From: Macrostomum lignano
Taxonomy: Eukaryota
NCBI GenBank assembly: GCA_002269645.1
Contig: NIVC01002785.1
Location: forward strand, 1 to 64,000
Direction of reading: 5' to 3'
DNA: 64,000 bases
How positions within the stretch are numbered: the stretch's first letter is position 1; each line of letters begins with the position of its first letter. The notes under the pieces were generated by a model, which saw nothing but the letters and a program-made list of their open reading frames with translations, did not search any database and was not told the DNA's origin. Position numbers and translations under genes: made by a program. Positions 26,444-64,000 of the stretch are shown here, piece after piece.

Positions 26444-28104
26444 ATGCTCTGCTGGCTGTGCTCTCAAAGATAGCTAGATTTCAAATACACTTGACTACGT
26501 TGAAATCAGATTTAATACCTATTAATTCACTTGGTCTGTTGGTGGTTTTCAGTTTCGAATGACAAATTAGAGAAGCAGCTGAGTATCATCAGTCGCTGGT
26601 TTTGATGGCGATGAATTTGGTTAGAATGAGTGGCTATCTTATTAAGCTCGAATTCCTCATTGGAGTTTCTTTGTTTATTGAAGTAATGTAGAGTAGGATC
26701 GACTGCTCATTAAACGGAACGGTTCCGTATTGGGTGCGGCAGTGGGTTGAGAGGCAGAATGGAGTCCTTGCAGCCAATCGGCAACGAATATTGACAGCTC
26801 ATATTTGTAAATTATCGCGTAAACAAGTGGGAAAGTTCCAATGTGCAATTGCTAGTCAGGATGAGTCCTTGAACTAGCGCTAAAATGACTGTGTATTTCC
26901 CAGCCTTCTACAGTCACTATATTGCTAGTTTCTTAAGGACAAAGTTAAAAGCATTCCACAGTGATTGATGGCATCTTAGCAGCTCCTCTTAAGCTATAAG
27001 CTTTAACCCTAACGCTAACTAAAACGCATGGCTTGTACGCTCGTCCATTGGAAGTGGGAGAGAACAAAAAAAGCAGCTCGTAGCGTCCTTTTAATTAGAC
27101 GCATTGATCTTCTCGATGGCCTCCATCTTGAGTAGCATCCTATGACAGTTTTTCATGGCTTCATGGAGCCGCAATTGTCCAGGCAGATGCCGTCAAAGAT
27201 ACCCTGAAAGGACTCAGATCAGCCGTTTTAGTTGCTTTTGAAAGTAGAGATTTATTTTGTGGAGTGCGGCACACTGGGAAGCACGGGTGACGTGATTGGC
27301 TGCTGTTATAAGGTGCAATTTTTTCAGCCTTTTGTCTTTTTGTCTTTCAGCCTGCTTGGCTATATCTATCTTCTTTCTGCGTTCGTTAATTCAACAACAG
27401 AACAGACATAAAGGTACACAGGCCGGGCTTGTGCCATTGCACACCTTTGATGGCGACTCGCTTGTTAGAATATACCTACTATCCCTTAAAATCCTTTCAT
27501 AACATGTCATAAAATTATTCACTGTAAATTAAAAGTGGCTGAAAAAGTGGTCGAGAGGTGGCCGGTTGTAAGTGGCTGGTGAGGGACTGAAAGTGTCCTT
27601 CCTTCAGCCACTAAAAGTGACCCTCTTTTATGGCCACTTTTTAGCATTTTTTCAGCCGTTTTTCGACCCGCCGTATTACACTTTACGGTCTCATTGTCTT
27701 AGGGTCTCCTTCCGGAGACTGCAGGTGCTGTACGATCTCTCCTGATAGAATTCTCAGTACTCTATGGTCCAACCATGGGCTTTGGAGCAACCAATAAGCA
27801 AAGCAGTTGATGACTTTGAAGTGCTTGGGAAGAGATGCGGACATGCCGGTGGTTCGGAACTCGCCAGAAAACATTTAAATACTGTGCGGGTTTTTTCCAC
27901 GGAATTCCCGCGCGTATTCCAACGTATTTCCGCGGACTATCCTGGGACAGTACTCAAAGCCATTTTTCTATACACTATTTTTATGAGATGCTCCAATTCG
28001 GCATCGGTGTTCTAGGCTTAATTTGTTCGTCTATCCTAGCTGAAGCGACAACACATGCAATTATGCCTCTCTTACTCTTTAAGAAGCAAGCAAGCCGGAA
28101 ATTC

Positions 28105-33000: not shown

Positions 33001-35115
33001 ACTTGGTCACATACACTTGGTCACAGACACTTGGTCACAGATACTTGGTCACAGACACTTGGTCACAGACACTTGGTCACATACACTTGGTCACATACAC
33101 TTGGTCACATACACTTGGGTCACAGACACTTGGTCACAGACACTTGGTCACATACACTTGGGTCACAGACACTTGGTCACAGACACTTGGTCACAGACAC
33201 TTGGTCACATACACTTGGTCACAGACACTTGGTCACAGACACTTGGTCACAGACACTTGGTCGCATACACTTGGTCACATACACTTGGGCACATAAACTT
33301 GGTCACAGACACTTGGTCACATAAACTTGGTCACAGACACTTGGTCACATACACTTGGGCACATAAACTTGGTCACAGACACTTGGTCACATACACTTGG
33401 TCACAGACACTTGGTCACAGACACTTGGTCACAGACACTTGGTCACAGACACTTGGTCACAGACACTTGGTCACAGACACTTGGTCACATACACTTGGTC
33501 ACAGACACTTGGTCACAGACACTTGGTCACAGACACTTGGTCACATACACTTGGTCACAGACACTTGGTCACAGACACTTGGTCACAGACACTTGGTCAC
33601 AGACACTTGAGCAGTTAATTTTTTAGTTTAATTTTTTACTCGCAGTAAATTTAAAACTATGAATACCAGATATGTTACTATATATTTAGAGTGTAAACAA
33701 TGAATCATGAACCCAATACTTCTTTTGAACACCAAATAAGGTAAACTCTCTCATTCTCAGTGTGCTCAAGGCGAACTCTTCACTAGCCTGATCCGACGGC
33801 AACTCCGGCAACGATGCCGGCTCGCTCCCAGCAGCTTCGGGCACAAGCGACGACCTGCCTGACACCGACAGTCGGGACTCGAACCGGTAGATTGCCTGCG
33901 CCAAGTCCAGGTTGCCCAGCAGGCCAATGCTGGGCAGCTCGCCCGAGTAATTTGTCACCCTGCCGTCCGCTAGCTGAAGCAGCTTGCGGCCCTGGGGTTG
34001 GTTGTTGGGATTGGCTTGTTGATTCAATGCGGCCTCTGAGATCTCATTAGCGCCATTTCCTCCGATTTGACACATCTGAGATCTCATTAGCGCCATTTCC
34101 TCCGATTTGACACATCTGAGATCTCATTAGCGCCATTTCCTCCGATTTGACACCTCTGAGATCTCATTAGCGCCATTTCCTCCAATTTGAAACCTCTGAG
34201 ATCTCATTAGCGCCATTTCCTCCGATTTGAAACATCTGAGATCTCATTTGCGCCATTTTCTCCAATTTGACACATCTGAGATCTCATTAGCGCCATTTCC
34301 TCCGATTTGAAACATCTGAGATCTCATTAGCGCCATTTCCTCCAATTTGACACATCTGAGATCTCATTTGCGCCATTTTCTCCAATTTGACACATCTGAG
34401 ATCTCATTAGCGCCATTTCCTCCAATTTGAAACATCTGAGATCTCATTAGCGCCATTTCCTCCAATTTGAAACATCTGAGATCTCATTAGCGCCATTTCC
34501 TCCAATTTGAAACATCTGAGATCTCATTAGCGCCATTTCCTCCAATTTGAAACATCTGAGATCTCATTAGCGCCATTTCCTCCGATTTGACACCTCTGAG
34601 ATCTCATTAGCGCCATTTCCTCCGATTTGAAACATCTGAGATCTCATTTGCGCCATTTTCTCCAATTTGACACATCTGAGATCTCATTAGCGCCATTTCC
34701 TCCAATTTGAAACATCTGAGATCTCATTAGCGCCATTTCCTCCGATTTGACACCTCTGAGATCTCATCATCCTAGAGATTATCAAAGACAAAGATTAGAA
34801 GAATTCTCAAATGCGAACAGCCAAGTAGCACCTCATTGAACTGCTGGTAGCGGCTGATGCCCAGTTCCTCGGCCAGCTGGCACACCCGAGGCTGGCAGTC
34901 GCCGACCCACTGCCCGCCCAGGTCCCACCAGTCTGTGCCGCCGCTGCCACTGCTAGGCAAGGCGGTGCTCAGGGTCCGGCCGCCCACCCGGTCCTTGGCC
35001 TCCAGCACTAACAGGCGGGCCGCTGGCCGCGACTCCAGCAGGCGGACAGCTGCCACCAGGCCGGAAATTCCAGCGCCAATTATCAGGGCATCAAATGGCT
35101 GGTTGGAAGCCTGAG
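30010..35115 (-). CDS. Flavin monoamine oxidase family protein; exons ~35115-34832, 33991-~33800 (3' end unresolved), 32822-32622, 31785-31368, 30431-30010; start exon not located
   Basis: FAD-binding DALIIGAGISGLVAA...VLEAKDRVGGRT, DLGGQWVG, GGAQSLSLRLA and C-terminal LLFAGTE...GYMEGAIESGERAA. Splice phases are consistent where resolved. Confidence 0.88.
30480..31345. repeat. 24-bp minisatellite (AGAGAACCGGAAGTTAATCGGATT)n filling an MAO-like intron
   Basis: About 35 tandem units with recurring variants. Confidence 0.93.
31855..32600. repeat. 32-bp minisatellite (GAGATCTCAGCTCAGACACCTGCCTTCTCGAT)n filling an MAO-like intron
   Basis: About 22 tandem units. Confidence 0.93.
32995..33610. repeat. 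14-bp minisatellite (ACACTTGGTCACAG)n in an MAO-like intron
   Basis: About 43 tandem units. Confidence 0.93.
34035..34768. repeat. 40-bp minisatellite (CTGAGATCTCATTAGCGCCATTTCCTCCGATTTGACACAT)n filling an MAO-like intron
   Basis: About 18 tandem units. Confidence 0.93.
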
Positions 35116-39731: not shown

Positions 39732-40296
39732 GTGCATCACCGTGCATCACCGTGCATCACAGTGCATCACCGTGCATCACCGTGCATCACCGTGCATCAC
39801 CGTGCATCACCGTGCATCACCGTGCATCACCGTGCATCACCGTGCATCACAGTGCATCACCGTGCATCACCGTGCATCACCGTGCATCACCGTGCATCAC
39901 CGTGCATCACCGTGCATCACCGTGCATCACCGTGCATCACCGTGCATCACAGTGCATCACCGTGCATCACCGTGCATCACCGTGCATCACCGTGCATCAC
40001 CGTGCATCACCGTGCATCACCGTGCATCACCGTGCATCACCGTGCATCACCGTGCATCACCGTGCATCACCGTGCATCACCGTGCATCACCGTGCATCAC
40101 CGTGCATCACCGTGCATCACCGTGCATCACCGTGCATCACAGTGCATCACCGTGCATCACCGTGCATCACCGTGCATCACCGTGCATCACCGTGCATCAC
40201 CGTGCATCACCGTGCATCACCGTGCATCACCGTGCATCACCGTGCATCACCGTGCATCACCGTGCATCACCGTGCATCACCGTGCATCACCGTGTA
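39732..40296. repeat. 10-bp minisatellite (CGTGCATCAC)n
   Basis: About 56 nearly perfect units. Confidence 0.95.
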
Positions 40297-41564
40297 TCCC
40301 GCGAAGACGTTGGCATGTCACAATCCGGCACACGTAGTAGATTCTGATCGGCAACATTTTTGAGAAATTAGAAGAGCCAAAAAAACTTATGAAGTCCGGC
40401 GAGCACTGAAAAATGACAGGTGCTGTCATAAATCATCCGATTTTGATACAAAATGATTTATGAGTTTCAGCAATGCCAAGTCCAAAATCGACATAAAAAT
40501 ACAGTTACTTTGGATCGGGGATTGATGAGGAGAGTGCAATGGGATATTCTAAGAGAAGATTAGGATTAAAACGAATATTAGGGGTTAAGATTACACCTAA
40601 TCCAAATATCGATTTTTCACCGTGTAGAGTATCACAAGTATCACCGTGTATCTCAGAGTAGCACCCAAGGACAACTAAAGCAACGTATATACAGGACGCG
40701 ACTTTCACTTTTCATGGAAAAAGTTTTGAAGGCCAGTTTTCGCCGAAAAATACACTACGGATACAGGAAGTTTTCATTTTTTCAGCACTAAAATTGTGAT
40801 TGCCTTCGATAGGAAGCAGACCCAGTGTTCATATTTTAATATGTTGTGCCTTTCTTATTGCTCTATCAATTTTCATAAAGCTTTTTGTTCAGAAAATTAG
40901 GATTCTATGATAATTTTTGATTCTACGCACTATTGCACGTGCCCTATGCCTAAAAACCCATTAAGATGGTTTGGCTCGGCTCATTGATTTTATGAATCTG
41001 TTTTTTCATTCTTAGCTGACTGTGTAACAATATGTGTAACAGAGATTATGAAATAGATGCATAAAACCTATGAGTCGGGCTGTGCCATGCACTTTTATGA
41101 TTTTAGGTATAGGAAATGTACTTAGAATAAAAATAACATCCGCGGTGCCGTAGAATCCCAATTTTCTGAACGAAAAGCTTTATGAATGTCAATAGAATTA
41201 CAAGAAAGGCCAGACATACCAAAAGACAAACATTGGGTCTGCGTGTCCTATCGAAAGCAATAAAAATTTTTGTGTTGAAAAAATGCACTAATGATACAGC
41301 ATCGGCCCATGCATGTACAAAAATTTCTATACTCGTACATGCCAATTTGCTTGTGCAAAGACCGTCCAGATCGTCAGGTAGGCTGGCGACTCCGTCAGCG
41401 TGACCCTTTTGTGGCGAACCCTTTGTGGGGACCCTTTGACTTAACTTGACTTAGCTGCAGGGCTGTCCCGGAGGGGACACGGTGGGAAGGCACAGACGAC
41501 GCCCAGGGAGGCCCCCCAGTTGTGCAGCTGTGTTGCGCTCTGGAAAGTAGAGTTTAGCCTAGAG

Positions 41565-44149: not shown

Positions 44150-44757
44150 TCTGCAGGATAGGTGTTTTAGGTCTGCAGGATAGGTGTTTTAGGTCTGCAG
44201 GATTACTTGTGCTTTAGGTCTGCAAGATGAGTGTGTTTTAGGTCGGTATTAGGTCTGCAGGATAGGTGTTTTAGGTCTGCAGGATAGGTGTTTTAGGTCT
44301 GCATGATAGGTGTTTTAGGTCTGCATGATAGGTGTTTTAGGTCTGCAGGATAGGCGTGTTTTAGGTCTGCAAGATAGGCGTGTTTTAGGTCTGCAGGATA
44401 GGTGTTTTAGGTCTGCATGATAGGTGTTTTAGGTCTGCATGATAGGTGTTTTAGGTCTGCAGGATAGGCGTGTTTTAGGTCTGCAAGATAGGCGTGTTTT
44501 AGGTCTGCAGGATAGGTGTTTTAGGTCTGCAGGATAGGTGTTTTAGGTCTGCAGGATAGGTGTTTTAGGTCTGCAGGATAGGTGTTTTAGGTCTGCAGGA
44601 TAGGTGTTTTAGGTCTGCAGGATAGGTGTTTTAGGTCTGCAGGATAGGTGTTTTAGGTCTGCAGGATAGGCGTGTTTTAGGTCTGCAGGATAGGCGTGTA
44701 TTAGGTCTGCAGGATAGGCGTGTATTAGGTCTGCAAGATAGGCGTGTTTTAGGTCTG
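44150..44757. repeat. 22/24-bp minisatellite (TTTTAGGTCTGCAGGATAGGTG)n
   Basis: Tandem units; part of the block duplicated at 47770-50030. Confidence 0.93.
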
Positions 44758-45576: not shown

Positions 45577-45621
45577 CTGCATGGGCGAATTAGTTAGCGA
45601 GTAAATTTACTCATTGCTCAT

Positions 45622-47080
45622 TACTGGCGCCCCTCAATTCTGGCGCTCATTACTGGCGCCCCTCAATTCTGGCGCTCATTAATACTGGCGCCCCTCAATT
45701 CTGGCGCTCATTAATACTGGCGCCCCTCAATTCTGGCGCTCATTACTGGCGCCCCTCAATTCTGGCGCTCATTAATACTGGCGCCCTTCAATTCTGGCGC
45801 TTATTAATACTGGCGCCCTTCAATTCTGGCGCTCATTACTGGTGCCCCTCAATTCTGGCGCTCATTACTGGCGCCCTTCAATTCTGGCGCTCATTACTGG
45901 TGCCCCAGGATTCTGGCGCTCATTACTGGCGCCCCTCAATTCTGGCGCTCATTACTGGCGCCCCTCAATTCTGGCGCTCATTAATACTGGCGCCCCTCAA
46001 TTCTGGCACTCATTAATACTGGCGCCCCTCAATTCTGGCGCTCATTACTGGCGCCCCTCAATTCTGGCGCTCATTAATACTGGCGCCCCTCAATTCTGGC
46101 GCTCATTACTGGTGCCCCAGGATTCTGGCGCTCATTACTGGCGCCCCTCAATTCTGGCGCTCATTAATACTGGCGCCCTTCAATTCTGGCGCTCATTAAT
46201 ACTGGCGCCCTTCAATTCTGGCGCTCATTAATACTGGCGCCCTTCAATTCTGGCGCTCAATAATACTGGCGCCCTTCAATTCTGGCGCTCATTAATACTG
46301 GCGCCCCTCAATTCTGGCGCTCATTACTGGCGCCCCTCAATTCTGGCGCTCATTAATACTGGCGCCCCTCAATTTTGGCGCTCATTACTGGCGCCCCTCA
46401 ATTCTGGCGCTTATTAATACTGGCGCCCTTCAATTCTGGCGCTCCTTGCGCCCTCAATTCTGGCGCTCATTACTGGCGCCCCTCAATTCTGGCGCTCATT
46501 AATACTGGCGCCTCTCAATTCTGGCGCTCATTAGTGGCGCCCCTCAATTCTGGCGCTCATTACTGGCGCCCCTCAATTCTGGCGCTCATTACTGGTGCCA
46601 CAAGATTCTGGAGCTCATTACTGGCGCCCCTCAATTCTGGCGCTCATTACCGCTCATTACTGGCGCCCCTCAATTCTGGCACTCATTACTGGCGCCCCTC
46701 AATTCTGGCGCTCATTACTGGCGCCCCTCAATTCTGGCGCTCATTACTGGTGCCACAAGATTCTGGAGCTCATTACTGGCGCCCCTCAATTCTGGCGCTC
46801 ATTACCGCTCATTACTGGCGCCCCTCAATTCTGGCACTCATTACTGGCGCCCCTCAATTCTGGCGCTCATTACTGGCGCCCCTCAATTCTGGCGCTCATT
46901 ACTGGCGCCCCTCAATTCTGGCGCTCATTACTGGTGCCCCAAGATTCTGGAGCTCATTACTGGCGCCCCTCAATTCTGGCGCTCATTACTGGCGCCCCTC
47001 AATTCTGGCGCTCATTACTGGTGCCCCAAGATTCTGGAGCTCATTACTGGCGCCCCTCAATTCTGGCGCTCATTACTGCT
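45622..47080. repeat. 29/32-bp minisatellite (CTGGCGCTCATTACTGGCGCCCCTCAATT)n
   Basis: About 48 tandem units. Confidence 0.93.
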
Positions 47081-47769: not shown

Positions 47770-49203
47770 AGGTCTGCAGGATAGGTTTTTTAGGTCTGCA
47801 GGATAGGTGTTTTAGGTCTGCAGGATAGGTGTTTTAGGTCTGCAGGATAGGTGTTTTAGGTCTGCAGGATAGGTGTTTTAGGTCTGCAGGATAGGTGTTT
47901 TAGGTCTGCAGGATAGGCGTGTTTTAGGTCTGCAGGATAGGTGTTTTAGGTCTGCAGGATAGGCGTGTTTTAGGTCTGCAGGATAGGTGTTTTAGGTCTG
48001 CAGGATAGGTGTTTTAGGTCTGCAGGATAGGTGTTTTAGGTCTGCAGGATAGATGTTTTAGGTCTGCAGGATAGGTGTTTTAGGTCTGCAGGATAGGCGT
48101 GTTTTAGGTCTGCAGGATAGGTGTTTTAGGTCTGCAGGATAGGTGTTTTAGGTCTGCAGGATAGGTGTTTTAGGTCTGCAGGATAGGTGTTTTAGGTCTG
48201 CATGATAGGTGTTTTAGGTCTGCAGGATAGGTGTTTTAGGTCTGCAGGATAGGTGTTTTAGGTCTGCAGGATAGGCGTGTTTTAGGTCTGCAGGATAGGC
48301 GTGTTTTAGTTCTGCATGATAGGTGTTTTAGGTCTGCATGATAGGTGTTTTAGGTCTGCAGGATAGGCGTGTTTTAGGTCTGCAGGATAGGTGTTTTAGG
48401 TCTGCAGGATAGGTGTTTTAGGTCTGCAGGATAGGTGTTTTAGGTCTGCAGGATAGGCGTGTTTTAGGTCTGCAGGATAGGCGTGTTTTAGGTCTGCAGG
48501 ATAGGCGTGTTTTAGGTCTGCAGGATAGGCGCGTTTTAGGTCTGCAGGATAGGCGTGTTTTAGGTCTGCAGGATAGGTGTTTTAGGTCTGCATGATAGGT
48601 GTTTTAGGTCTGTAGGATAGGTGTTTTAGGTCTGCAGGATAGGCGTGTTTTAGGTCTGCAGGATAGGTGTTTTAGGTCTGCAGGATAGGTGTTTTAGGTC
48701 TGCATGATAGGTGTTTTAGGTCTGTAGGATAGGTGTTTTAGGTCTGCAGGATAGGTGTTTTAGGTCTGCAGGATAGGTGTTTTAGGTCTGCATGATAGGT
48801 GTTTTAGGTCTGTAGGATAGGTGTTTTAGGTCTGCAGGATAGGCGTGTTTTAGGTCTGCAGGATAGGCGTGTTTTAGGTCTGCAGGATAGGTGTTTTAGG
48901 TCTGCATGATAGGTGTTTTAGGTCTGCAGGATAGGCGTGTTTTAGGTCTGCAGGATAGGCGTGTTTTAGGTCTGCAGGATAGGCGTGTTTTAGGTCTGCA
49001 GGATAGGTGTTTTAGGTCTGCAGGATAGGCGTGTTTTAGTTCCGCATGATAGGTGTTTTAGGTCTGCATGATAGGTGTTTTAGGTCTGCAGGATAGGCGT
49101 GTTTTAGGTCTGCAGGATAGGTGTTTTAGGTCTGCATGATAGGTGTTTTAGGTCTGCAGGATAGGCGTGTTTTAGGTCTGCAAGATAGGCGTGTTTTAGG
49201 TCT
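47770..49203. repeat. 22/24-bp minisatellite (TTTTAGGTCTGCAGGATAGGTG)n, second array
   Basis: About 63 tandem units, followed by the same unique flank as the 44150 array. Confidence 0.93.
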
Positions 49204-49643
49204 GATTTTGTCTCTTTGGAAGTTGATTTAGTGCTTTTTGTGTAGTGAATAATTTCCACAAAGCCCCTGTATCAGCATTTTACAAATAAGCAAAATTATT
49301 TTGCCAATAGGCGGTCAGTACTGGCTTGCTAAGAGTTTGTTAAAAGCTGAAGAAACTACAAATTAAAAAAAATGAATATCGTGGTTTAATAGTAAGTTAG
49401 ACAAGCAAGTCTGCTGCTGACATTGATCTAAACCAAATAAATAAAAAATAAAAAACGTAAACAGAGGATTTTGAGAATATTTTGATATGGAGGTTAGGTA
49501 CAGGCAATCGAGTCCATACTTAAAAAACAAAACTTGATGCTGAGGGATCTGGCAATTTGTTTATATGAGTTCAGCTGATTAAGTTTAGCGTAAATTTAGA
49601 GTTCCTATCGTATCAGAATCTTCTGCTGTTGCTAAGCAGTGGC

Positions 49644-50118: not shown

Positions 50119-50544
50119 GGTTGCTCTTGGTAAGGGCTTGTACTTTTCTTCCTATAAGAGCTCTGTAGCTTTTTAAAAAATGTAGTTTGAGCTTATAGAC
50201 TGCATGGATGAGGGCAGTTTTATGTAGGGGTTTTGTTCCCATGACAAAGCTTCTCAAAAAAATTGAGAAGACAATAAGGCATTCCTAAGTGTAAGAAGCG
50301 GCAGGTTTGCTGCCTCACCCAACACGCAGCGCTGGATGCTAAAGGGCTGGGCATTGCACTGAGTTGCCGCGTCAGTTCATAGAAGGCTTAAAATCTATGC
50401 TTGTTTACCGCCAGTGTGGCATTCAATTTGACAGGCATTGTCCCATTTCTGCTATTCGCAATATTTTGCTCTAGTAGATGTGGGTGCGCCCCCTGCACAA
50501 ACATTTTAAGCCAGCTAGCCAGACAGTTGGGTACGATGCGGCGC

Positions 50545-50812
50545 TAAGTTCACGAAGATTTCTCAAATCTGTTTACAGTTGGTCTAGGGCTAAGTTCACG
50601 AAGATTTCTCAAATCTGTTTACAGTTGGTCTAGGGCTAAGTTCACGAAGATTTCTCAAATCTGTTTACAGTTGGTCTAGGGCTAAGTTCACGAAGATTTC
50701 TTAAATCTGTTTACAGTTGGTCTAGGGCTAAGTTCACGAAGATTTCTTAAATCTGTTTACAGTTGGTCTAGGGCTAAGTTCACGAAGATTTCTTAAATCT
50801 GTTTACAGTTGG
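50545..50812. repeat. 46-bp minisatellite (~6 units)
   Basis: (GGTCTAGGGCTAAGTTCACGAAGATTTCTCAAATCTGTTTACAGTT)n. Confidence 0.92.
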
Positions 50813-50924
50813 TCAAGCCCCGTTCTTAATTTGAGTTACGCTCGTACCTATGCATGCACCAGAGGCATAGCCAAATGGGGGGGGGGGGCGAGGGGGACCG
50901 CGGCCTTACAATTGGCTGGCAACA

Positions 50925-54150: not shown

Positions 54151-54384
54151 CGACAGCAGCGAGGAGGACCCAGTGGAGCTCCAGGTGAACGCCGTCCTGT
54201 TAATGTGGGCACTGCAGATCGTGAGCCCAAGCGAACTGGCCCAAGCATCTCTACAGGACCCGGAGGTCAGCCGTTCTGGCTGATCAAGGAGCAGCTCCCA
54301 GTCTGGAATGAAGGCAAGTGCCTGGCGAATGGGTTGCGCGCGGCTGGTGATTCCCGCTTCGCTGAGGGAGAACTGCTGGCGCAC

Positions 54385-56462
54385 TCTCTGTCCCTCCCGC
54401 TTTCCTCTCTCTGTCTCTCCCCGCTTTCCCCTCTCTGTCTCTTCCCGCTTTCCCCTCTGTCTCACTCCGCTTTCCCCTCTCTCTGTCTCACTCCGCTTTC
54501 CCCTCTCTCCCCTCTGTCTTGTCTTTCCCCGCTTTCCTCTCTGTCTCTTCCCGCTTTCCCCTCTCTGTCTCTTCCCGCTTTCCCCTCTCTGTCTCACTCC
54601 GCTTTCCCCTCTCTCTGTCTCACTCCGCTTTCCCCTCTATGTCTTTCCCCGCTTTCCCCTCTGTCTCTTCCCGCTTTCCCCTATCTGTCTCTTCCCGCTT
54701 TCCCCTCTGTCTCTCCCCGCTTTCCCCTCTCTGTCTCACTCCGCTTTCCCCTCTCTTTGTCTCACTCCGCTTTCCCCTCTGTCTCTTCCCGCTTTCCCCT
54801 ATCTGTCTCTTCCCGCTTTCCCCTCTGTCTCTTCCCGCTTTCCCCTCTCTGTCTCACTCCGCTTTCCCCTCTCTGTCTCTCCCCGCTTTCCCCCTCTGTC
54901 TCTCCCCGCTTTCCCCTCTCTGTCTCTCCCCGCTTTCCCCTCTCTGTCTCTTCCCGCTTTCCCCTCTCTGTCTCTCCCCGCTTTCCCCTCTCTGTCTCTT
55001 CCCGCTTTCCCCTCTCTGTCTCTCCCCGCTTTCCCCTCTCTGTCTCTTCCCGCTTTCCCTCTCTGTCTCTCCCCGCTTTCCTCTCTGTCTCTTCCCGCTT
55101 TCCCCTCTGTCTCTTCCCGCTTTCCCCTCTGTCTCTTCCCGCTTTCCCCTCTCTGTCTCACTCCGCTTTCCCCTCTCTGTCTCTCCCCGCTTTCCCCTCT
55201 CTGTCTCTCCCCGCTTTCCCCTCTCTGTCTCTCCCCGCTTTCCCCTCTCTGTCTCTCCCCGCTTTCCCCTCTCTGTCTTTCCCCGCTTTCTCTTCTCTGT
55301 CTCTCCCCGCTTTCCTCTCTGTCTTTCCCCGCTTTCTCTTCTCTGTCTCTCCCCGCTTTCCTCTCTGTCTCTCCCCGCTTTCTCCTCTGTCTCTCCCCTC
55401 TTTCCCATCTCTGTCTCTCCCGCTTTCTCCTCTGTCTCTCCCCTCTTTCCCATCTCTGTCTCTCCCCGCTTTCCCCTCTCTGTCTTTCCCCGCTTTCTCC
55501 TCTCTGTCTCTCCCCGCTTTCCCCTCTCTGTCTCACTCCGCTTTCCCCTCTCTGTCTCTCCCCGCTTTCTCCTCTCTGTCTCTCCCCGCTTTCCCCTCTC
55601 TGTCTCTCCCCGCTTTCCCCTCTCTGTCTCTCCCCGCTTTCCCCTCTCTGTCTTTCCCCGCTTTCTCTTCTCTGTCTCTCCCCGCTTTCCTCTCTGTCTT
55701 TCCCCGCTTTCTCTTCTCTGTCTCTCCCCGCTTTCCCCTCTCTGTCTCTCCCCGCTTTCTCCTCTCTCTCCCCTCTTTCCCATCTCTGTCTTTCCCCGCT
55801 TTCCCTCTGTCTCTCCCGCTTTCCTCTCTGTCTCCCCCGCTTTCCCTCTGTCTCTCCCCGCTTTCCTCTCTGTCTCTCCCCGCTTTCCCTCTGTCTCCCC
55901 CTTTTCTCTGTCTCTCCCGCTTTCCCTCTCTGCTCTTCCCCGCTTTCTCTCTCTGTCTCGCTTTCCCCTCTCTGTCTCTTCCCCGCTTTCCCCTCTCTGT
56001 CTCTCCCCGCTTTCCCCTCTCTGTCTCTCCGCTTTCCCCTCTCTGTCTCTCCCCGCTTTCCCCTCTCTGTCTTCCCCGCTTTCTCCTCTCTGTCTCTGCT
56101 TTCCCCTCTCTGTCTCTCCCCGCTTTCCCCTCTCTGTCTCTCCCCGCTTTCCCCTCTCTGTCTCTCCCCGCTTTCCCCTCTCTCCCTCACTGTCTGCTTT
56201 CCCCACTGTCTCTCCCCGCTTTCCCCTCTCTGTCTCTTCCCCGCTTTCCCCTCTGTCTCTCCGCTTTCCCCTCTCTCCCCTCTGTCTTTCCCCGCTTTCC
56301 CCTCTGTCTCTCCCCGCTTTCCCCTCTCTGTCTCTTCCCCGCTTTCCCTCTGTCTCTGTCCCCCGCTTTCCCCTCTCTGTCTCTCTCCGCTTTCCCCTCT
56401 GTCTCTCTCCGCTTTCCCCTCTCTGTCTCTCCTCGCTTTCCCCTCTCTCTCCGCTGTCCCCT
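54385..56462. repeat. Pyrimidine-rich degenerate ~20-22-bp minisatellite (CTCTGTCTCTCCCCGCTTTCCC)n
   Basis: About 2.1 kb of tandem units; source of the long spurious ORFs. Confidence 0.95.
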
Positions 56463-58062: not shown

Positions 58063-58294
58063 GGTGAGGATCCCGTCGGAAAGAAATAACAAAGAAGAGA
58101 GAACACAGCACTTCAGGCAGATTTGCGATTTTACATGTAGACTAATTAATAGTCAGCAGATCCTACCGGGCTCAGTGGGTCGGCTGGGAGGACGGTGTTA
58201 GCCTCAGAGCAGACTCAGAGGTCTGGATTTAGGAGGGGAACTGTTTTACGAAATGTTATACAAATATGCACACAATTTCTCCTTGGTGCAATTA

Positions 58295-59850
58295 TGGCGC
58301 TCACTACTGGCGCCCCAAGATTCTGGCACTCATTACTGGCGCCCCAAGATTCTGGCACTCTTTACTGGCGCCCCAAGATTCTGGCACTCATTACTGGCGC
58401 CCCAAGATTCTGGCACTCATTACTGGCGCCCCAAGATTCTGGCACTCATTACTGGCGCCCCAAGATTCTGGCACTCATTACTGGCGCCCCAAGATTCTGG
58501 CACTCATTACTGGCGCCCCAAGATTCTGGCACTCATTACTGGCGCCCTAAGATTCTGGCACTCATTACTGGCGCCCCAAGATTCTGGCACTCATTACTGG
58601 CGCCCCAAGATTCTGGCACTCATTACTGGCGCCCCAAGATTCTGGTACTCATTACTGGCGCCCCAAGATTCTGGCACTCATTACTGGCGCCCCAAGATTC
58701 TGGCACTCATTACTGGCGCCCTAAGATTCTGGCACTCATTACTGGCGCCCCAAGATTCTGGCACTCATTACTGGCGCCCAAGATTCTGGCACTCATTACT
58801 GGCGCCCCAAGATTCTGGCACTCATTACTGGCGCCCCAAGATTCTGGCACTCATTACTGGCGCCCCAAGATTCTGGCACTCATTACTGGCGCCCCAAGAT
58901 TCTGGCACTCATTACTGGCGCCCTAAGATTCTGGCACTCATTACTGGCGCCCTAAGATATTGGCACTCATTACTGGCGCCCCAAGATTCTGGCACTCATT
59001 ACTGGCGCCCCAAGATTCTGGTACTCTTTACTGGCGCCCCAAGATTCTGGCACTCATTACTGGCGCCCCAAGATTCTGGCACTCATTACTGGCGCCCCAA
59101 GATTCTGGCACTCATTACTGGCGCCCCAAGATTCTGGCACTCATTACTGGCGCCCCAAGATTCTGGCACTCATTACTGGCGCCCCAAGATTCTGGCACTC
59201 TTTACTGGCGCCCCAAGATTCTGGCACTCATTACTGGCGCCCAAGATTCTGGCACTCATTACTGGCGTCCTAAGATTCTGGCACTCATTACTGGCGCCCT
59301 AAGATTCTGGCACTCATTACTGGCGCCCCAAGATTCTGGCACTCATTACTGGCGCCCCAAGATTCTGGCACTCATTACTGGCGTCCTAAGATTCTGGCAC
59401 TCATTACTGGCGCCCCAAGATTCTGGCACTCATTACTGGCGCCCCAAGATTCTGGCACTCATTACTGGCGCCCCAAGATTCTGGCACTCATTACTGGCGC
59501 CCCAAGATTCTGGCACTCATTACTGGCGCCCTAAGATTCTGGCACTCATTACTGGCGCCCCAAGATTCTGGCACTCATTACTGGCGCCCTAAGATTCTGG
59601 CACTCATTACTGGCGCCCCAAGATTCTGGCACTCATTACTGGCGCCCTAAGATTCTGGCACTCATTACTGGCGCCCTAAGATATTGGCACTCATTACTGG
59701 CGCCCCAAGATTCTGGCACTCATTACTGGCGCCCCAAGATTCTAGTACTCACTACTGGCGCCCCTTCCGATTCAAGCGCTCATTACTAGCGGCCCGAGAT
59801 TCTAGAACTCTCTATACTGACGCCCCAAGATTCTGGCGCTTATTACTGGC
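58295..59850. repeat. 29-bp minisatellite (CTGGCACTCATTACTGGCGCCCCAAGATT)n
   Basis: About 52 units; related to the 45622 array, with further degenerate units at 60105-60240. Confidence 0.94.
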
Positions 59851-60600
59851 ACTGCAGTGACTTGGCTTGTGTTGTGTGGGGTGCTGGGGGTTACTGCGTA
59901 CACTTTACCATCGTGCTCTTTAACTCTCTCCTTCGCTTGTTCTTTTGTGCGTACGTGCACGTGACTAATATGTCTATTTTACAGTCCCCAAATTATTGAT
60001 CGGTTAAAATAACTATTTCGACAAAAAAAACATATATGAATGATTTTATCATGCTATCGCATAAGCATCTTTCTGCCATGTAAACTAAGTGAAGTCTTTA
60101 CAGGCACCCCTCAATTCTGGCGCTCACTACTGGCGCCCCTTCGATTCTAGCGCTCATTACCATGTCACCCCAAGAATTTAGCGGTCATTACTGGCACCCC
60201 TCAATTCTGGCGCTCATTACCGGCGCCCCTCGGTTCTGGCGATTGTCGTTACTGTCGCTCTAGGTTGCTGGGGTCCCATATTGCTGGCAACCACACATTA
60301 AAGAATGAATGGACTACGCCCATGCAGAAACCGTGCATAAAAGCCAATTAAATGGTACAACCGTGGAAAGTGGACCGCGGGGAATTCACATCGAGTTGAG
60401 TTTTTCGCAGACTTCACCCACAGTTCTCAGCGGACAATTTCACACACTAGCTGCTTGCACGCGCAGTTCCACAGCCACGCCCAGAGCCAAACCTCGTGTA
60501 TATACGAGGAGGCGCTCCGGTTCCTGCTATTCTAACAAAGTTCACAATCCTGAAGACTTTCCGAAGAGCTGCCAAATCTAAACACAGATCCGCAAGCGCA

Positions 60601-60825
60601 ATGCGACTCGGACTGGTTCTCCTGCTGCTGCTGGGGGGTAAGAGACAGAGCTGGGGGACACCGGGAATTCTGCGATGAAATCCGATAAAACCGACTAACC
60701 AACCAAACTTCCTCATAGCCTTCATGCTGACTGCCGAGGCCATCAATTGCTACACCTGCACGCTGTGCAGCGAGACTTTCAAAATGAGCGAAGTGTCCAC
60801 AACGACCAACTGCACCTACTGCGGA
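60601..60825 (+). CDS. Ly6/three-finger gene D: exon 1 (60601-60637) and exon 2 (60719-60825); exon 3 not in the window
   Basis: Near-identical to gene C, including the promoter and intron 1. Confidence 0.65.
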
Positions 60826-61202
60826 GTGAGTGCTTGCTCTCTTTTATGACCTGAGGAACTTAACAAGGGGGAAACCTACAAGAGGCATTTTTTAATGTTG
60901 TGCCCGAACAGAGAGAGAGGGGAGAGACCGAGAGAGGGGGAAATGGGAAGAGAGGAGGGAGGGCACCTCCAATCTTGGGTGCTGACACGTTGAAAAAAGA
61001 CTGATAAGTCAATTTAGTTAATGTTTCTCCGATATTTCGAATTTTAATAAATAATAAATTTTAACAAGAGAGAGAAACAAAGAGAGAGAGGGAGCGTGAG
61101 ACAGAAAGAGAGTGAGAGAGAGGGAGAGAGAGAGGGGGGGGGACAGGAAGGCACCTCCAATCTCGGACGCTGACACGTTGAAAAAAGGACTGAAGAGAGA
61201 GG

Positions 61203-61270
<68 letters not shown>

Positions 61271-61387
61271 CAGAGAAGCGGAGAGGGGGAGAGAGAGGCA
61301 GAGGGCAGAGAGAGAAAGAGAGAGAGGGAGAGAGAGGGAGAGAGAGAAGAGAGGTCACGGCGTGTTTAAAAAATAATTAATTTAGTA

Positions 61388-61429
61388 TGGGCTACCGGTT
61401 TCGAGCCTCTGGGCTCTTCGTCAGGCCAA
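61388..61429 (-). ncRNA. Minimal type I hammerhead ribozyme (HHR2)
   Basis: Minus strand UUGGC-CUGACGA-A-GAGCC CAGA GGCUC-GAA-ACCGGU-A-GCCCA: conserved core, 5-bp stem II, palindromic stem III and a GUA cleavage triplet; stem I has only 3 contiguous bp. Confidence 0.75.
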
Positions 61430-61469
61430 ATAGAGAAGAGATAGAGATAGAGAAAGAGAGAGAGAGAGG

Positions 61470-62153
61470 ACCGAGCGTTGACCGAGTTGCAATCGATCCT
61501 CTGGCTGATGGTGATCTTGACGGTCGTGGACGCGGATCCCGGGCAGACGGAGGTGAACCTGGCGTGCGCCTGGCAGCACTTGCACAGCCGAGCCGGGTTG
61601 CACGGCAGGAAGCCGAACTCCCACCGCCTTGTCGGGTAGAAGCCCAGCTCCGCCAGCACCTCGTATTTGATATTGCATAGAAAACGCCTGTTATAGCCCT
61701 GGTGCTGCACCAGATTCGACAGCAGCTCGGTGCAGGCCGCGTCGAAGTCGAGCACCTGCGGGCGTATCTGATGAGCTGGGACTTGACCACACCCCTAAAC
61801 GTCCGCCTCGGGTGAGATGAGTCGCGGTGGATAAGAGCTCGGCTGTCCGTGGGCTTGAAGAAGACTCTGGTCGCCAGACGCTTGGAGTCCCCCTCGCGGT
61901 CACAGAAGACGGTGGTATCCAGGAAGTTGACCTCGGTGCTGCTGTAGCTCAGCTGCAACCTGATGTTCGGGTCGAGGCCATCCAGGAGCTCGTGAAAGCG
62001 GACCAGCTCGTCTCTCGTTCCGTGCCAGACGCCGAAGATGTCGTCGATGTAGCGCAGCCACAGGGCGGGCTTCTGCGGGCTGAGCTCCAGGCCCCGCTGC
62101 TCCCAGTAGCCCATGTAGATGTTGCTGTAGCTGGGTGCAAACGACTTCCCCAT
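61470..62153 (-). mobile_element. Penelope-like element RT fragment running into the linker before the GIY-YIG endonuclease, truncated at both ends by (TC)n
   Basis: MGKSFAPSYSNIYMG, WLRYIDDIFGVW, VNFLDTTV and FKPTD..ALIH..SSHP....GVVKSQLIRY are PLE RT motifs; after a frameshift it reads C...CKCC...ISQRIDCNS.N. Confidence 0.85.
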
Positions 62154-62205
62154 GGAGATAGAGAGAGAGAAAGTGAGAGAGATAGAGAGAGAAAAAGTGG
62201 GAGAG

Positions 62206-62240
<35 letters not shown>

Positions 62241-62276
62241 AAGTGAGAGAGATAGAGAGAGAGAGAGAGAAAGTGG

Positions 62277-62324
<48 letters not shown>

Positions 62325-62332
62325 AAAAGTGG

Positions 62333-62366
<34 letters not shown>

Positions 62367-62398
62367 AAGTGAGAGAGATAGAGAGAGAGAGAGAAAGT

Positions 62399-62448
<50 letters not shown>

Positions 62449-62519
62449 AAGTGGGAGAGAGATAGATAGAGAGAGAGAGAGAGAAAGTGAGAGAGATAGA
62501 GAGAGAGAGAAAGTGGGAT

Positions 62520-62573
<54 letters not shown>

Positions 62574-62603
62574 TGAGAGAGATAGAGAGAAAAAGTGGGA
62601 GAG

Positions 62604-62638
<35 letters not shown>

Positions 62639-62659
62639 AAGTGGGAGAGAGAGAGAGAG

Positions 62660-62694
<35 letters not shown>

Positions 62695-62769
62695 AAGTGG
62701 GAGAGAGATAGATAGAGAGAGAGAGAGAGAGAAAGTGAGAGAGATAGAGAGAGAGAGAGAAAGTGGGAT

Positions 62770-62836
<67 letters not shown>

Positions 62837-62944
62837 AAAAGTGGGAGAGAGATAGATAGAGAGAGAGAGAGAAAGTGAGAGAGATAGAGAGAGAAAAAGT
62901 GGGAGAGAGATAGATAGAGAGAGATAGAGAGAGAGAGAAAGTGG

Positions 62945-63017
<73 letters not shown>

Positions 63018-63092
63018 TGGGAGAGAGATAGATAGAGAGAGAGAAAGTGAGAGAGATAGAGAGAGAGAAAGTGGAAGAGAGAGAGAGAGAGC

Positions 63093-63128
<36 letters not shown>

Positions 63129-63130
63129 AA

Positions 63131-63169
<39 letters not shown>

Positions 63170-63386
63170 TGGGAGAGAGATAGATAGAGAGAGAGAGAGC
63201 GAGAGAAAGAGAGAAAGTGGGAGAGAGATAGAAAGATAGATAGAGAGAGAGAGAGAAAGTGAGAGAGATAGAGAGAGCGAGAAAGAGAGAGAAAGTGGGA
63301 GAGAGGGAGAGAGAGAGCGAGAGAGAGAAAGAGAAAGAGAGAGAAAGTGGGAGAGAGAGAGCGAGAGCGAGAGAGAGAGAAAGTGG

Positions 63387-63433
<47 letters not shown>

Positions 63434-63522
63434 TGAGAGAGATAGAGAGAAAAAAAGTGGGAGAGAGATAGATAGAGAGAGAGAGAGAGAAAGTGAGAGA
63501 GATAGAGACAGAGAGAAAGTGG

Positions 63523-63572
<50 letters not shown>

Positions 63573-63583
63573 AAGTGGGAGAG

Positions 63584-63616
<33 letters not shown>

Positions 63617-63651
63617 AAGTGAGAGAGATAGAGAGAGAGAGAAAGTGGGAT

Positions 63652-63724
<73 letters not shown>

Positions 63725-63732
63725 GAGAGAGG
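62154..63732. repeat. Compound (GA)n microsatellite with recurring AAAGTGGGAGA/GATAGA interruptions; shorter GA tracts at 60905-61350 and 61430-61470
   Basis: Direct inspection. Confidence 0.97.
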
Positions 63733-63801
63733 AGGGCGCCTCCAATCTCAGGCACGGACGCGGTACATGTAAAAAGGACAAACAAGTCAAGATGATTTAA
63801 G

Positions 63802-63842
63802 TTGCCGATATTTCGAATTAGGTAAATTCTTCGTCAGGGCAA
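63802..63842 (-). ncRNA. Minimal type I hammerhead ribozyme (HHR1)
   Basis: Minus strand UUGCC-CUGACGA-A-GAAUU UACCU AAUUC-GAA-AUAU-C-GGCAA: 5-bp stem I, 5-bp stem II, palindromic AUAU stem III and an AUC triplet. Confidence 0.8.
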
Positions 63843-64000
63843 GTGAAAAGTAGCGACAAGTGGTGTTGTAAAAGTTATTAAATAGGCGGGTTAGAGGGAG
63901 AGAGAGTAGGCAGGTAGATAGAGAGCGTACGGTATGTACACTTGGTGTGAGTCGATAAAACACTATTAGAGTTGAAAATGCAAAATAAAAAACAGTGCAC

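What the first reader, a model, noticed from the sequence alone, without database searches (positions are those of the whole stretch)
60955..63845. Hammerhead-ribozyme-bracketed Penelope fragment embedded in (GA)n microsatellite (retrozyme-like cassette)
Seen: on the minus strand the order is HHR1 (63842-63802), a ~50-nt box (AAAAGGAC...CCTCCAATCT on +), 1.6 kb of (UC)n, a PLE RT fragment, (UC)n, then HHR2 (61429-61388). After that come more (UC)n, a second box (~61150-61190), a decayed HHR1 (CCGATATTTCGAATT, ~61029) and a third box (~60963). Both intact ribozymes are in the same sense as the RT and have different stem II and III sequences. Established: minimal type I hammerheads with palindromic stem III occur in Penelope-like elements and retrozymes and are thought to cleave as dimers. 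Inference: cleavage at ~63807 and ~61393 would release a ~2.4-kb RNA that is about two-thirds (UC)n. Such a unit could be a non-autonomous PLE derivative that carries or seeds microsatellite, and it sits in the presumed intron 2 of Ly6 gene D.
Basis: partly seen in the sequence, partly recalled or inferred. Interest (0 to 1): 0.72.

Follow-up and report, generated by a model that had tools for sequence, protein, structure and literature searches.

The report
Truncated Penelope retrotransposon ends in microsatellite
A 3-kb GA-rich repeat block in a gene intron has collected five broken, same-direction pieces of Penelope-like retrotransposons, two with intact minimal hammerhead ribozymes; this looks like ordinary Penelope insertion debris, not a new ribozyme-bracketed mobile unit.

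Summary
Two intact minimal type I hammerheads lie on the minus strand (63842-63802, 61429-61388). The three 'boxes', the half-decayed hammerhead, the 1.6-kb GA array and a Penelope-like (PLE) coding fragment (62156-61474) are all where stated. Rfam finds nothing. My structural descriptor finds exactly these two sites (0.08 expected per shuffled window), and so does a covariance model trained only on outside min-HHRs (E=5e-6 and 0.0017).

The 'retrozyme-like cassette' interpretation is not supported:
- The two ribozymes belong to different families (all five stem II pairs and the stem III palindrome differ) and cannot heterodimerise (ddG 0.0).
- They are not copies of one terminal repeat, and there is no tandem unit.
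- All pieces are antisense to the host gene.

All three box copies end at the same nucleotide (...GAUUGGAGGYGCC) against (CT)n but start at different points. That is the signature of 5'-truncated retrotransposon 3' ends. A 60%-identical PLE from a metagenome has the same layout: ORF, hammerhead, homologous tail, microsatellite.

Best reading: repeated, strand-specific insertion of Neptune-like PLEs into a (GA)n tract, matching the published 3'-proximal hammerhead, 'tail', truncation and microsatellite bias. It is a new member of a known kind, of modest interest.

The parts
63893..63925 (.). Outer edge of the GA/CT-rich block, 5' of the HHR1 copy in PLE sense. It has the CTCTATCTA-type variants also seen in the main array.
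63843..63892 (-). About 50 nt of PLE 3'-UTR remnant upstream of HHR1. This is the 5' truncation point of copy 1. AACTTTTACAACACCACT resembles L001's TGCTTTTAAACTTCCACT.
63802..63842 (-). HHR1: intact minimal type I hammerhead (family A). Stem I 5 bp, stem II 5 bp, extra A, stem III palindrome AUAU. Cut between 63807 and 63806.
63735..63801 (-). Tail of copy 1 including box 1 (63782-63735). It ends ...GAGAUUGGAGGCGCC, 72 nt after the cut site, directly against (CT)n.
62155..63731 (.). Complex (GA)n array, 1577 bp, with 25 AAAGTGGG landmarks 36-82 bp apart and GATAGATAGAG variants.
61474..62156 (-). PLE coding fragment: RT motif B (MGKSFAPSYSN), YIDD, thumb and the C-x5-C-xx-C linker. It has one frameshift near 61760 and stops at CNSVNA, just before the GIY-YIG domain. 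It is 78% nt identical to L002.
61430..61473 (.). (ATAGAG)-type spacer between the coding fragment and HHR2.
61388..61429 (-). HHR2: intact minimal type I hammerhead (family B). Stem II GAGCC/GGCUC, stem III palindrome ACCGGU. Cut between 61393 and 61392.
61354..61387 (-). Short tail of the HHR2 copy, ending about 39 nt after the cut site (U-run then AAACACGCCGUGACC), followed by (CT)n.
61194..61353 (.). (GA)n tract.
61150..61192 (-). Box 2: the 43-nt 3'-terminal piece of family A only, with (CT)n on both sides. It is 93% identical to box 3.
61067..61134 (.). Degenerate (GA)n tract.
60962..61062 (-). Copy 3 of family A. It holds the 3' half of HHR1 (61043-61029, with the CUGANGA core lost), a spacer and box 3 (61005-60962). 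It is 80% identical to copy 1 over 90 nt.
60905..60961 (.). GA-rich end of the block, on the side nearest the host exon.
60719..60826 (+). Host exon (…AEAINCYTCTLCSETFKMSEVSTTTNCTYCG followed by gtgagt). The PLE block starts about 80 nt into the following intron and is antisense to it.

Best explanation
The block 60905-63925 is a (GA)n.(TC)n-rich tract in an intron. Neptune-like, endonuclease-bearing Penelope-like elements hit it several times, always in the same orientation.

Shown: there are five co-oriented PLE pieces.
- Three are 3' termini of one family. They share a fixed 3' end (...GAUUGGAGGYGCC, 72 nt past the hammerhead cut) and have different 5' truncation points (about 150, about 100 and 43 nt).
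- One is the 3' terminus of a second family (HHR2 plus a 39-nt tail).
- One is an internal RT-to-linker fragment.

Inferred mechanism, by analogy with published PLE biology:
1. The RT-EN protein, whose CX2-5CxxC linker has been proposed to direct microsatellite targeting, nicks the repeat.
2. Reverse transcription starts at an internal site a few tens of nt downstream of the hammerhead. This produces the constant 'box/tail' end.
3. Synthesis usually aborts early, leaving short hammerhead-plus-tail stubs.
4. The array then grew further by duplication of longer blocks.

The hammerheads are passengers of the PLE terminal region. They are of the minimal kind that needs a second identical copy, or the PLE protein, to cleave. 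Here each is single and antisense to the host gene, so they are most likely silent.
For: 1. Ribozyme class. Both motifs have the published metazoan PLE min-HHR build: stem I of 4-5 bp, an unpaired nt 5' of stem II, and a minimal palindromic helix III. Most such motifs are single and derive from truncated PLEs (PMC4209133). My descriptor and the outside-trained CM confirm both sites.

2. PLE identity of the coding fragment. It has relatives at 79% (P0002) and 60% (P0001) amino-acid identity. P0002 continues past the window's breakpoint into GIY-YIG (VYTVFCRRC...VYVGET; Pfam PF01541, E=0.006, below the cutoff). The C-x5-C-xx-C linker is present in the window, P0002 and L001. More distant hits carry RVT_1.

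3. The box is a 3' terminus. Three copies share the same end and differ in their starts.

4. Independent copy. L001 has its ORF end at 3081, a hammerhead of the same build at 3413-3458 (CM 30.2 bits), a homologous tail (U-run, GUGUCAGCAC) and then a (TCAG/TCAT)n microsatellite.

5. Literature.
- HHRs lie near the 3' ends or in pLTRs. There is a 30-40 bp tail, partial tandems and truncated copies are common, and insertion is biased to microsatellites, a bias linked to the CX2-5CxxC linker (PMC8557442).
- Reverse transcription starts internally about 85-90 nt past the HHR cut, the tail lies between the two start sites, and HHR cleavage is dispensable for insertion (PMC11167929).

6. Clustering. 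All PLE pieces lie in the only (GA)n block of a 64-kb window that contains many other tandem arrays.

7. Array-type CTAT-variant motifs occur on both sides of the inserts. This fits insertion into an existing tract.
Against: - The RT fragment lacks its own 3' end and is separated from HHR2 by 44 nt of repeat. Simple target-primed reverse transcription does not predict this. A later deletion or a template switch has to be assumed (note).
- A (GA)n preference has not been reported for PLEs in the papers I could read. Those report (TA)n, (CA)n and (C)n.
- With microsatellite flanks, no target-site duplications can be read.
- Only one outside copy (L001) shows the same hammerhead-tail-microsatellite layout. 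Four more distant relatives on long contigs had no intact hammerhead.
- Independent insertion and local duplication of box+(CT)n cannot be fully separated for boxes 2 and 3, which are 93% identical and 190 nt apart.
Confidence: 0.7

Rival explanations
1. One reading: HHR1 and HHR2 bracket a 2.4-kb non-autonomous, retrozyme-like or pLTR-capture unit. The unit is transcribed, self-cleaves at both ends, and is mobilised in trans by PLE proteins, carrying the microsatellite with it.
For: Two intact, co-oriented hammerheads lie 2414 nt apart. Host DNA captured between two direct pLTRs and moved in trans is documented in Adineta vaga (PMC3846280). Animal non-LTR retrozymes are thought to derive from PLE pLTRs (bioRxiv 10.64898/2026.07.22.740005).
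Against: - The two ends belong to different families, not one repeat. Only 69% of positions match over 108 aligned, and all stem II pairs and the stem III palindrome are replaced in compensated fashion.
- There is no heterodimer gain (ddG 0.0) and no in-cis partner for either ribozyme.
- There is no tandem unit and no canonical HHR with loop-loop contacts, both of which define retrozymes (PMC7229834).
- The box is followed by (CT)n in all three copies, so it is an end, not an internal 5' leader.
- The block is antisense to the host gene.
- No TSD can be read.
Confidence: 0.06
2. The microsatellite is brought or seeded by the element rather than being its target. The PLE RNA ends in (UC)n, either by read-through from a previous repeat site or by reiterative copying by its telomerase-related RT. 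This resembles the repeat tails of stringent LINEs or the telomere-repeat ends of EN-minus PLEs. Each insertion adds repeat, which later expands.
For: - Every PLE 3' end here is followed by (CT)n in the sense strand.
- L001's tail grades into (TCAG/TCAT)n and itself contains GUCAG motifs.
- EN-minus PLEs use reverse-complement telomeric repeats next to HHRs to attach to chromosome ends (PMC8557442).
- Strict co-orientation of five pieces fits priming by annealing to one strand of the repeat.
Against: - Array-type sequence also lies 5' of the outermost copy (63925-63893).
- The 1.6-kb array has a higher-order block structure unrelated to any PLE sequence.
- In the Anolis PLE, priming occurs at an internal site without homology to the target (PMC11167929).
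- The window tail shares the GUGUCAGC motif with L001 yet abuts a different repeat.
Confidence: 0.15
3. There were only one or two original insertions. The multiple box+(CT)n copies arose by unequal exchange or segmental duplication inside the unstable array.
For: The array clearly grew by duplication of blocks. Boxes 2 and 3 are 93% identical and 190 nt apart.
Against: - Homology of box 2 starts abruptly at UCAGUCC, with (CT)n upstream. The upstream flank of box 3 (HHR1 3' half plus spacer) is not duplicated.
- Box 1 differs from boxes 2 and 3 by a 5-nt indel and 12-23% substitutions.
- HHR2 is a different family.
Confidence: 0.09

Closest known systems
Minimal type I hammerheads (min-HHRs) of metazoan Penelope-like elements (Cervera & de la Pena 2014, PMC4209133)
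   Same: Full catalytic core, open stem I of 4-5 bp, an unpaired nucleotide 5' of stem II, and helix III reduced to a 4-6 nt palindrome that can only form between two copies. They sit next to PLE coding sequence and occur as single motifs from truncated elements.
   Different: Stem II here is 5 bp; the Schistosoma families described have 7-8 bp. Self-cleavage was not tested. Rfam models do not detect them.
Canonical EN+ PLEs of the Neptune/Nematis type (Arkhipova 2006; Craig et al. 2021, PMC8557442)
   Same: RT followed by thumb, the CX2-5CxxC linker and, in relatives, a C-terminal GIY-YIG with CxxC. The hammerhead lies near the 3' end, followed by a short tail. Copies are truncated and co-oriented, and associated with a microsatellite.
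   Different: The window copy is only a 680-bp internal fragment with a frameshift and no EN. The associated repeat is (GA)n, and (TCAG/TCAT)n in L001, not the (TA)n, (CA)n or (C)n reported. Clade placement rests on the linker motif, not on a phylogeny.
PAc (Poseidon of Anolis carolinensis) insertion mechanism (Frangieh et al. 2024, PMC11167929)
   Same: The genomic 3' ends of insertions lie a fixed few tens of nt downstream of the hammerhead cut (72 and about 39 nt here; about 85-92 nt in PAc). The roughly 33-nt difference between the two tail lengths is about the size of the PAc 'tail' between two RT start sites.
   Different: PAc targets AT-rich DNA and lacks the CX2-5CxxC linker. In PAc the hammerhead overlaps the ORF start. 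The RT start sites for this family are inferred from junctions only.
Non-LTR retrozymes of animals (Cervera & de la Pena 2020, PMC7229834; Li et al. 2026 preprint)
   Same: Type I hammerheads of PLE ancestry in non-coding repeats.
   Different: Retrozymes are tandem arrays of 170-450 bp units, each with the same canonical HHR, and give small circRNAs. Here there are two different minimal HHRs 2.4 kb apart and no unit repeat.
pLTR-mediated capture of host DNA in Adineta vaga Penelope (Arkhipova et al. 2013, PMC3846280)
   Same: Foreign sequence lies between two co-oriented PLE terminal regions.
   Different: There the two pLTRs are copies of one sequence and the unit has an 8-10 bp TSD and an empty allelic site. 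Here the ends belong to different families and no TSD can be read.

Membership tests
Hammerhead ribozyme, minimal type I (PLE min-HHR) | Conserved core: C3U4G5A6N7G8A9, G12A13A14, A15.1-U16.1, H17 | tested here: met
   Both sites have every core position.
Hammerhead ribozyme, minimal type I (PLE min-HHR) | Open stem I (4-5 bp) and closed stem II, with an unpaired nt 5' of stem II | tested here: met
   HHR1 has stem I 5 bp and stem II 5 bp. HHR2 has stem I 3 bp, a C·U mismatch and one further A-U pair, and stem II 5 bp. Both have an extra A. The same trait is seen in 9 of 9 outside min-HHRs and is described in PMC4209133.
Hammerhead ribozyme, minimal type I (PLE min-HHR) | Helix III reduced to a palindrome, allowing a domain-swapped homodimer | tested here: met
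   The palindromes are AUAU and ACCGGU. RNAcofold gives the swapped dimer for HHR2 (ddG -3.5). For HHR1 the 4 A-U pairs are too weak to appear in the MFE dimer.
Hammerhead ribozyme, minimal type I (PLE min-HHR) | Scores with a covariance model of the class | tested here: met
   Model R1, built from four non-window min-HHRs, gives 27.2 bits (E=5e-6) and 19.5 bits (E=0.0017), with no other hit in the window.
Hammerhead ribozyme, minimal type I (PLE min-HHR) | Self-cleavage at H17 | not testable with these tools
   Needs in vitro transcription of monomer and tandem-dimer constructs, with and without PLE protein.
Rfam Hammerhead_1 / other Rfam hammerhead families | Match to the curated covariance model | tested here: not met
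   No hit at gathering score or at E<=10 with lax filters on 60700-64000.
Penelope-like element, canonical EN+ (Neptune/Nematis type) | PLE-type RT with thumb | tested here: met
   The fragment covers RT motif B to the thumb. Its best hits are RT proteins carrying RVT_1 and HTH_animal. Pfam does not score the fragment itself.
Penelope-like element, canonical EN+ (Neptune/Nematis type) | C-terminal GIY-YIG endonuclease | tested here: inconclusive
   Absent from the window copy, which is truncated at CNSVNA. It is present in the 79%-identical relative P0002 and in L001 (GIY-YIG E=0.006, below the Pfam cutoff; motifs VYTV...VYVGET visible).
Penelope-like element, canonical EN+ (Neptune/Nematis type) | CX2-5CxxC Zn-finger-like linker upstream of EN | tested here: met
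   C-NPARL-C-KC-C in the window, C-NPTRL-C-KC-C in P0002 and C-GTNTP-C-EC-C in L001.
Penelope-like element, canonical EN+ (Neptune/Nematis type) | Hammerhead-bearing terminal region (pLTR) with tail at the insertion end | tested here: met
   HHR plus a 39-72 nt tail forms a fixed 3' end in four window copies and in L001.
Penelope-like element, canonical EN+ (Neptune/Nematis type) | Placement in the clade by RT phylogeny | not tested
   No reference set of named PLE clades was available. The assignment rests on the linker motif only.
Non-LTR retrozyme | Tandem repeats of a 170-450 bp unit, each with the same type I HHR | tested here: not met
   There is no unit repeat. The two HHRs are 2414 nt apart and differ.
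Non-LTR retrozyme | Canonical HHR with loop 1-loop 2 contacts, active in tandem | tested here: not met
   Stem I is open with no loop 1, which is the minimal build.
Non-LTR retrozyme | Expressed as small circular RNA | not testable with these tools
   No transcriptome is available.
pLTR-bracketed captured unit (A. vaga type) | Two direct copies of the same pLTR | tested here: not met
   HHR1 end vs HHR2 end: 69% identity over 108 aligned nt, with all stem II pairs and the palindrome replaced.
pLTR-bracketed captured unit (A. vaga type) | Target-site duplication and an empty site | tested here: inconclusive
   Both flanks are CT repeat, so no TSD can be read. No allele or orthologue is available.

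The most novel reading that the evidence does not exclude
This PLE lineage homes strand-specifically to (GA)n.(TC)n, and to other microsatellites in relatives. It would do so by pairing a repeat-bearing RNA 3' end with the nicked repeat, in the way its telomere-attaching EN-minus cousins use telomeric repeats. Each abortive insertion would deposit a hammerhead-tail stub plus more repeat. The element would then both target microsatellite arrays and help build them, possibly including mobilisation of repeat-filled units bracketed by PLE ends.
Probability: 0.12. Interest if true: 0.6.

Novelty: new member of a known kind. Interest (0 to 1): 0.3.

Why it matters
As it stands, this is a well-preserved example of known PLE biology. 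Minimal dimer-type hammerheads mark the 3' ends of truncated copies, and the copies cluster in a microsatellite.

It has practical value for annotation. Rfam misses these ribozymes entirely, while a small class-specific model finds them cleanly.

The fixed tail end at 72 nt and about 39 nt past the cut offers a sequence-level readout of where this family's reverse transcriptase starts. That can be compared with the single PLE studied biochemically.

If a genome-wide census confirmed the strict (GA)n strand specificity, it would add a new target repeat to those known for PLEs. It would also make the proposed role of the CX2-5CxxC linker in repeat recognition testable.

Tried and rejected
1. Rfam at gathering score and at E<=10 gave no hits. 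I do not count this as evidence against the ribozymes, because an outside-trained min-HHR model finds both.

2. Pfam on the window fragment gave nothing useful. Relatives were needed.

3. A protein-pattern scan of metagenome contigs with the linker+EN profile gave no confirmed relative.

Eight true min-HHRs survived the structural filter, and none is followed directly by a microsatellite. Only L090 among those loci has a detectable PLE endonuclease.

5. A second large protein search with P0002 returned only itself and L001's protein, so no closer 3' UTRs were obtained.

6. Four distant Neptune-like relatives on long contigs, plus L003 and L004, had no intact min-HHR within reach, so they do not help decide whether the repeat is target or cargo.

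7. A conserved terminal hairpin in the box (GCACC/GGUGC vs GUGCC/GGCGC) is not more stable than shuffled sequence (z about -0.3), and three copies are too few to judge. I dropped it.

8. The third CTGANGA...CGAAA match, at 26553-26592, fails the structural descriptor and is chance.

9. I looked for any link between the array's AAAGTGGG landmarks and PLE sequence and found none.
Full report
**Observation**

- HHR1 (63842-63802) is UUGCC-CUGACGA-A-GAAUU/UACCU/AAUUC-GAAA-UAU-C^GGCAA.
- HHR2 (61429-61388) is UUGGC-CUGACGA-A-GAGCC/CAGA/GGCUC-GAAA-CCGGU-A^GCCCA.
- All invariant hammerhead core positions are present in both. The cut sites fall between 63807/63806 and 61393/61392, which are 2414 nt apart.
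- Three 'boxes' lie at 63782-63735, 61192-61150 and 61005-60962. A half hammerhead lies at 61043-61029; its 15-mer is identical to part of HHR1. These align with each other and occur nowhere else in the window.
- The 1577-bp GA array (62155-63731) is real. It is a complex array with 25 AAAGTGGG landmarks spaced 36-82 bp apart and GATAGATAGAG variants.

**Are the ribozymes more than chance?**

Rfam gives no hit, either at gathering scores over the whole window or at E<=10 with lax filters over the region.

A structural descriptor finds exactly the two claimed sites in both strands of the 64 kb. It requires stem I, CUGANGA, 0-1 extra nt, stem II, GAAA, A15.1...U16.1, H17 and closure of stem I. 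In 200 dinucleotide-preserving shuffles it gave 0.08 hits per window, 0.005 with a palindromic stem III, and none with stem II of at least 5 bp as well.

I then built a covariance model from four minimal hammerheads found on unrelated metagenome contigs. It hits HHR1 at 27.2 bits (E=5e-6) and HHR2 at 19.5 bits (E=0.0017), with nothing else in the window at E<=10. It also hits the hammerhead of the related element L001 at 30.2 bits.

The Rfam miss therefore reflects the models, not the sequence.

The build matches what Cervera and de la Pena described for metazoan Penelope-like elements: a short open stem I, an unpaired nucleotide 5' of stem II, and helix III reduced to a palindrome. They also note that most such motifs are single and come from truncated elements (PMC4209133). 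All nine outside min-HHRs I recovered share the unpaired nucleotide.

**The coding fragment**

The only PLE-like coding sequence in the window is 62156-61474 on the minus strand. It runs from RT motif B (MGKSFAPSYSN) through YIDD and the thumb to a C-x5-C-xx-C linker. It has one frameshift and stops at ...CNSVNA.

- Its closest relatives are P0002 (79% aa identity; 78% nt identity over 688 nt to L002) and P0001 (60%).
- P0002 continues beyond CNSVNA into a GIY-YIG nuclease (VYTVFCRRC...VYVGET). Pfam PF01541 scores E=0.006, below the cutoff. L001 encodes the same domain.
- RT plus a C-terminal GIY-YIG plus the CX2-5CxxC linker is the canonical EN+ PLE architecture of the Neptune/Nematis type (PMC8557442).
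- The lineage is rare in the databases. A second search returned only P0002 and L001's protein.

**What the 'box' is**

The three box copies end at the same nucleotide (...GAGAUUGGAGGYGCC) and are each followed by (CT)n. They start at different points:
- copy 1 extends about 50 nt upstream of HHR1;
- copy 3 reaches only into the 3' half of the hammerhead;
- copy 2 is just the last 43 nt.

 A constant 3' end with a variable 5' end is the signature of 5'-truncated retrotransposon copies.

L001 gives an independent view of an element with its whole 3' end. Its ORF ends at 3081 and a hammerhead of the same build lies at 3413-3458. A tail homologous to the window's follows (spacer, U-run, GUGUCAGCAC), and then a (TCAG/TCAT)n microsatellite runs to the contig end. 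The HHR2 copy has a shorter version of the same tail, ending about 39 nt after the cut.

These distances fit the only biochemically studied PLE. There, reverse transcription starts internally about 85-90 nt downstream of the hammerhead cut, at two adjacent sites, and the 30-40 bp between them is the genomic 'tail'. Hammerhead cleavage is not needed for insertion in that system, and the ribozyme cleaves only with the protein present (PMC11167929).

**Is it one cassette?**

Four tests speak against this.

1. The two bracketing ends are not copies of one repeat. All five stem II pairs, the stem III palindrome (UAUA vs CCGG), H17 and the tail length differ, in a fully compensated way. Identity is 69% over 108 aligned nt. 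Terminal repeats made in one retrotransposition, and retrozyme units, start out identical. This is divergence between families, not decay in place.

2. RNAcofold gives the expected domain-swapped dimer for HHR2+HHR2 (6-bp intermolecular helix III, swapped stem I, ddG -3.5 kcal/mol). It gives no gain for HHR1+HHR2 or for HHR1 with its decayed copy (ddG 0.0). No ribozyme here has a partner in cis.

3. The features that define animal retrozymes are absent. These are tandem 170-450 bp units, each carrying the same canonical HHR (PMC7229834; preprint 10.64898/2026.07.22.740005).

4. The host gene is on the + strand: a signal-peptide exon near 60601-60637, then exon 60719-60826 with a GT donor. The PLE block is antisense to it and would need its own promoter.

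pLTR-mediated capture of host DNA does exist (PMC3846280). There, however, the two pLTRs are identical and target-site duplications and empty sites are seen. Here the flanks are repeats and no duplication can be read.

**Most likely history**

A (GA)n.(TC)n tract in this intron was hit repeatedly, and always in the same orientation, by Neptune-like PLEs of at least two families. Most events aborted early and left hammerhead-plus-tail stubs. The tract then grew further by block duplication.

Supporting points:
- All PLE pieces lie in the only GA block of a window full of other tandem arrays.
- Array-type CTAT variants flank the inserts on both sides.
- A microsatellite insertion bias is published for PLEs with this linker (PMC8557442).

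Open points:
- The RT fragment lacks its own 3' end and is separated from HHR2 by 44 nt of repeat.
- (GA)n is not among the repeats reported as PLE targets in the papers I could read.
- The rival in which the element carries or seeds the repeat cannot be excluded without empty sites or a genome-wide census.

**Verdict**

The ribozymes and the PLE fragment are real, but the composite is best explained as ordinary clustered PLE debris in a targeted microsatellite. It is not a new ribozyme-bracketed element. This is a new member of a known kind, of modest interest.

Noticed in passing
window 45616-47078, 58291-59850, 60098-60241: The same 29-bp minisatellite unit (…TTACTGGCGCCCCTCAATTCTGGC…) forms three separate arrays. 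One lies just upstream of the Ly6-like gene that hosts the PLE block.
   Followed up: no
window 30501-34767, 39732-40298, 44249-44757, 47770-49204, 50543-50814: The window is unusually dense in long minisatellite arrays. Units are 24, 32, 14, 40, 10, 22 and 46 bp; for example GTGCATCACC x57, and AGGTCTGCAGGATAGGTGTTTT in two arrays.
   Followed up: no
window 54384-56448: A 2-kb CT-rich array with a 24-bp unit (CTCTCTGTCTCTCCCCGCTTTCCC) on the + strand. It contains no PLE tail, box or hammerhead, unlike the GA block.
   Followed up: partly
window 26553-26592 (-): A third match to CTGANGA…CGAAA. It fails the stem I/II descriptor and the min-HHR covariance model, so it is a chance match.
   Followed up: yes
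window 60490-60826 (+): The 5' end of the host gene is visible: a TATA-like tatatac near 60500, a signal-peptide exon (MRLGLVLLLLLG, then gtaag) near 60601-60637, and an exon at 60719-60826 encoding …AEAINCYTCTLC…NCTYCG, which is Ly6/three-finger-like.
   Followed up: partly
L001 3459-3875: In the 60%-identical PLE, the tail grades through degenerate CAGCCTGTCAGTCAGAC units into a (TCAG/TCAT)n microsatellite. The tail itself contains GTCAG motifs, which hints at tail-repeat microhomology.
   Followed up: partly
L029 1185-1225 and 1732-1775 (+): A short metagenome contig carries two different minimal hammerheads about 550 nt apart on the same strand, with no PLE ORF detectable using my queries.
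   Followed up: no
L248 9278-12210: The Ptychodera flava locus with a related RT fragment has several long (AT)n tracts 2-5 kb downstream. This fits the (TA)n association reported for other PLE clades.
   Followed up: no
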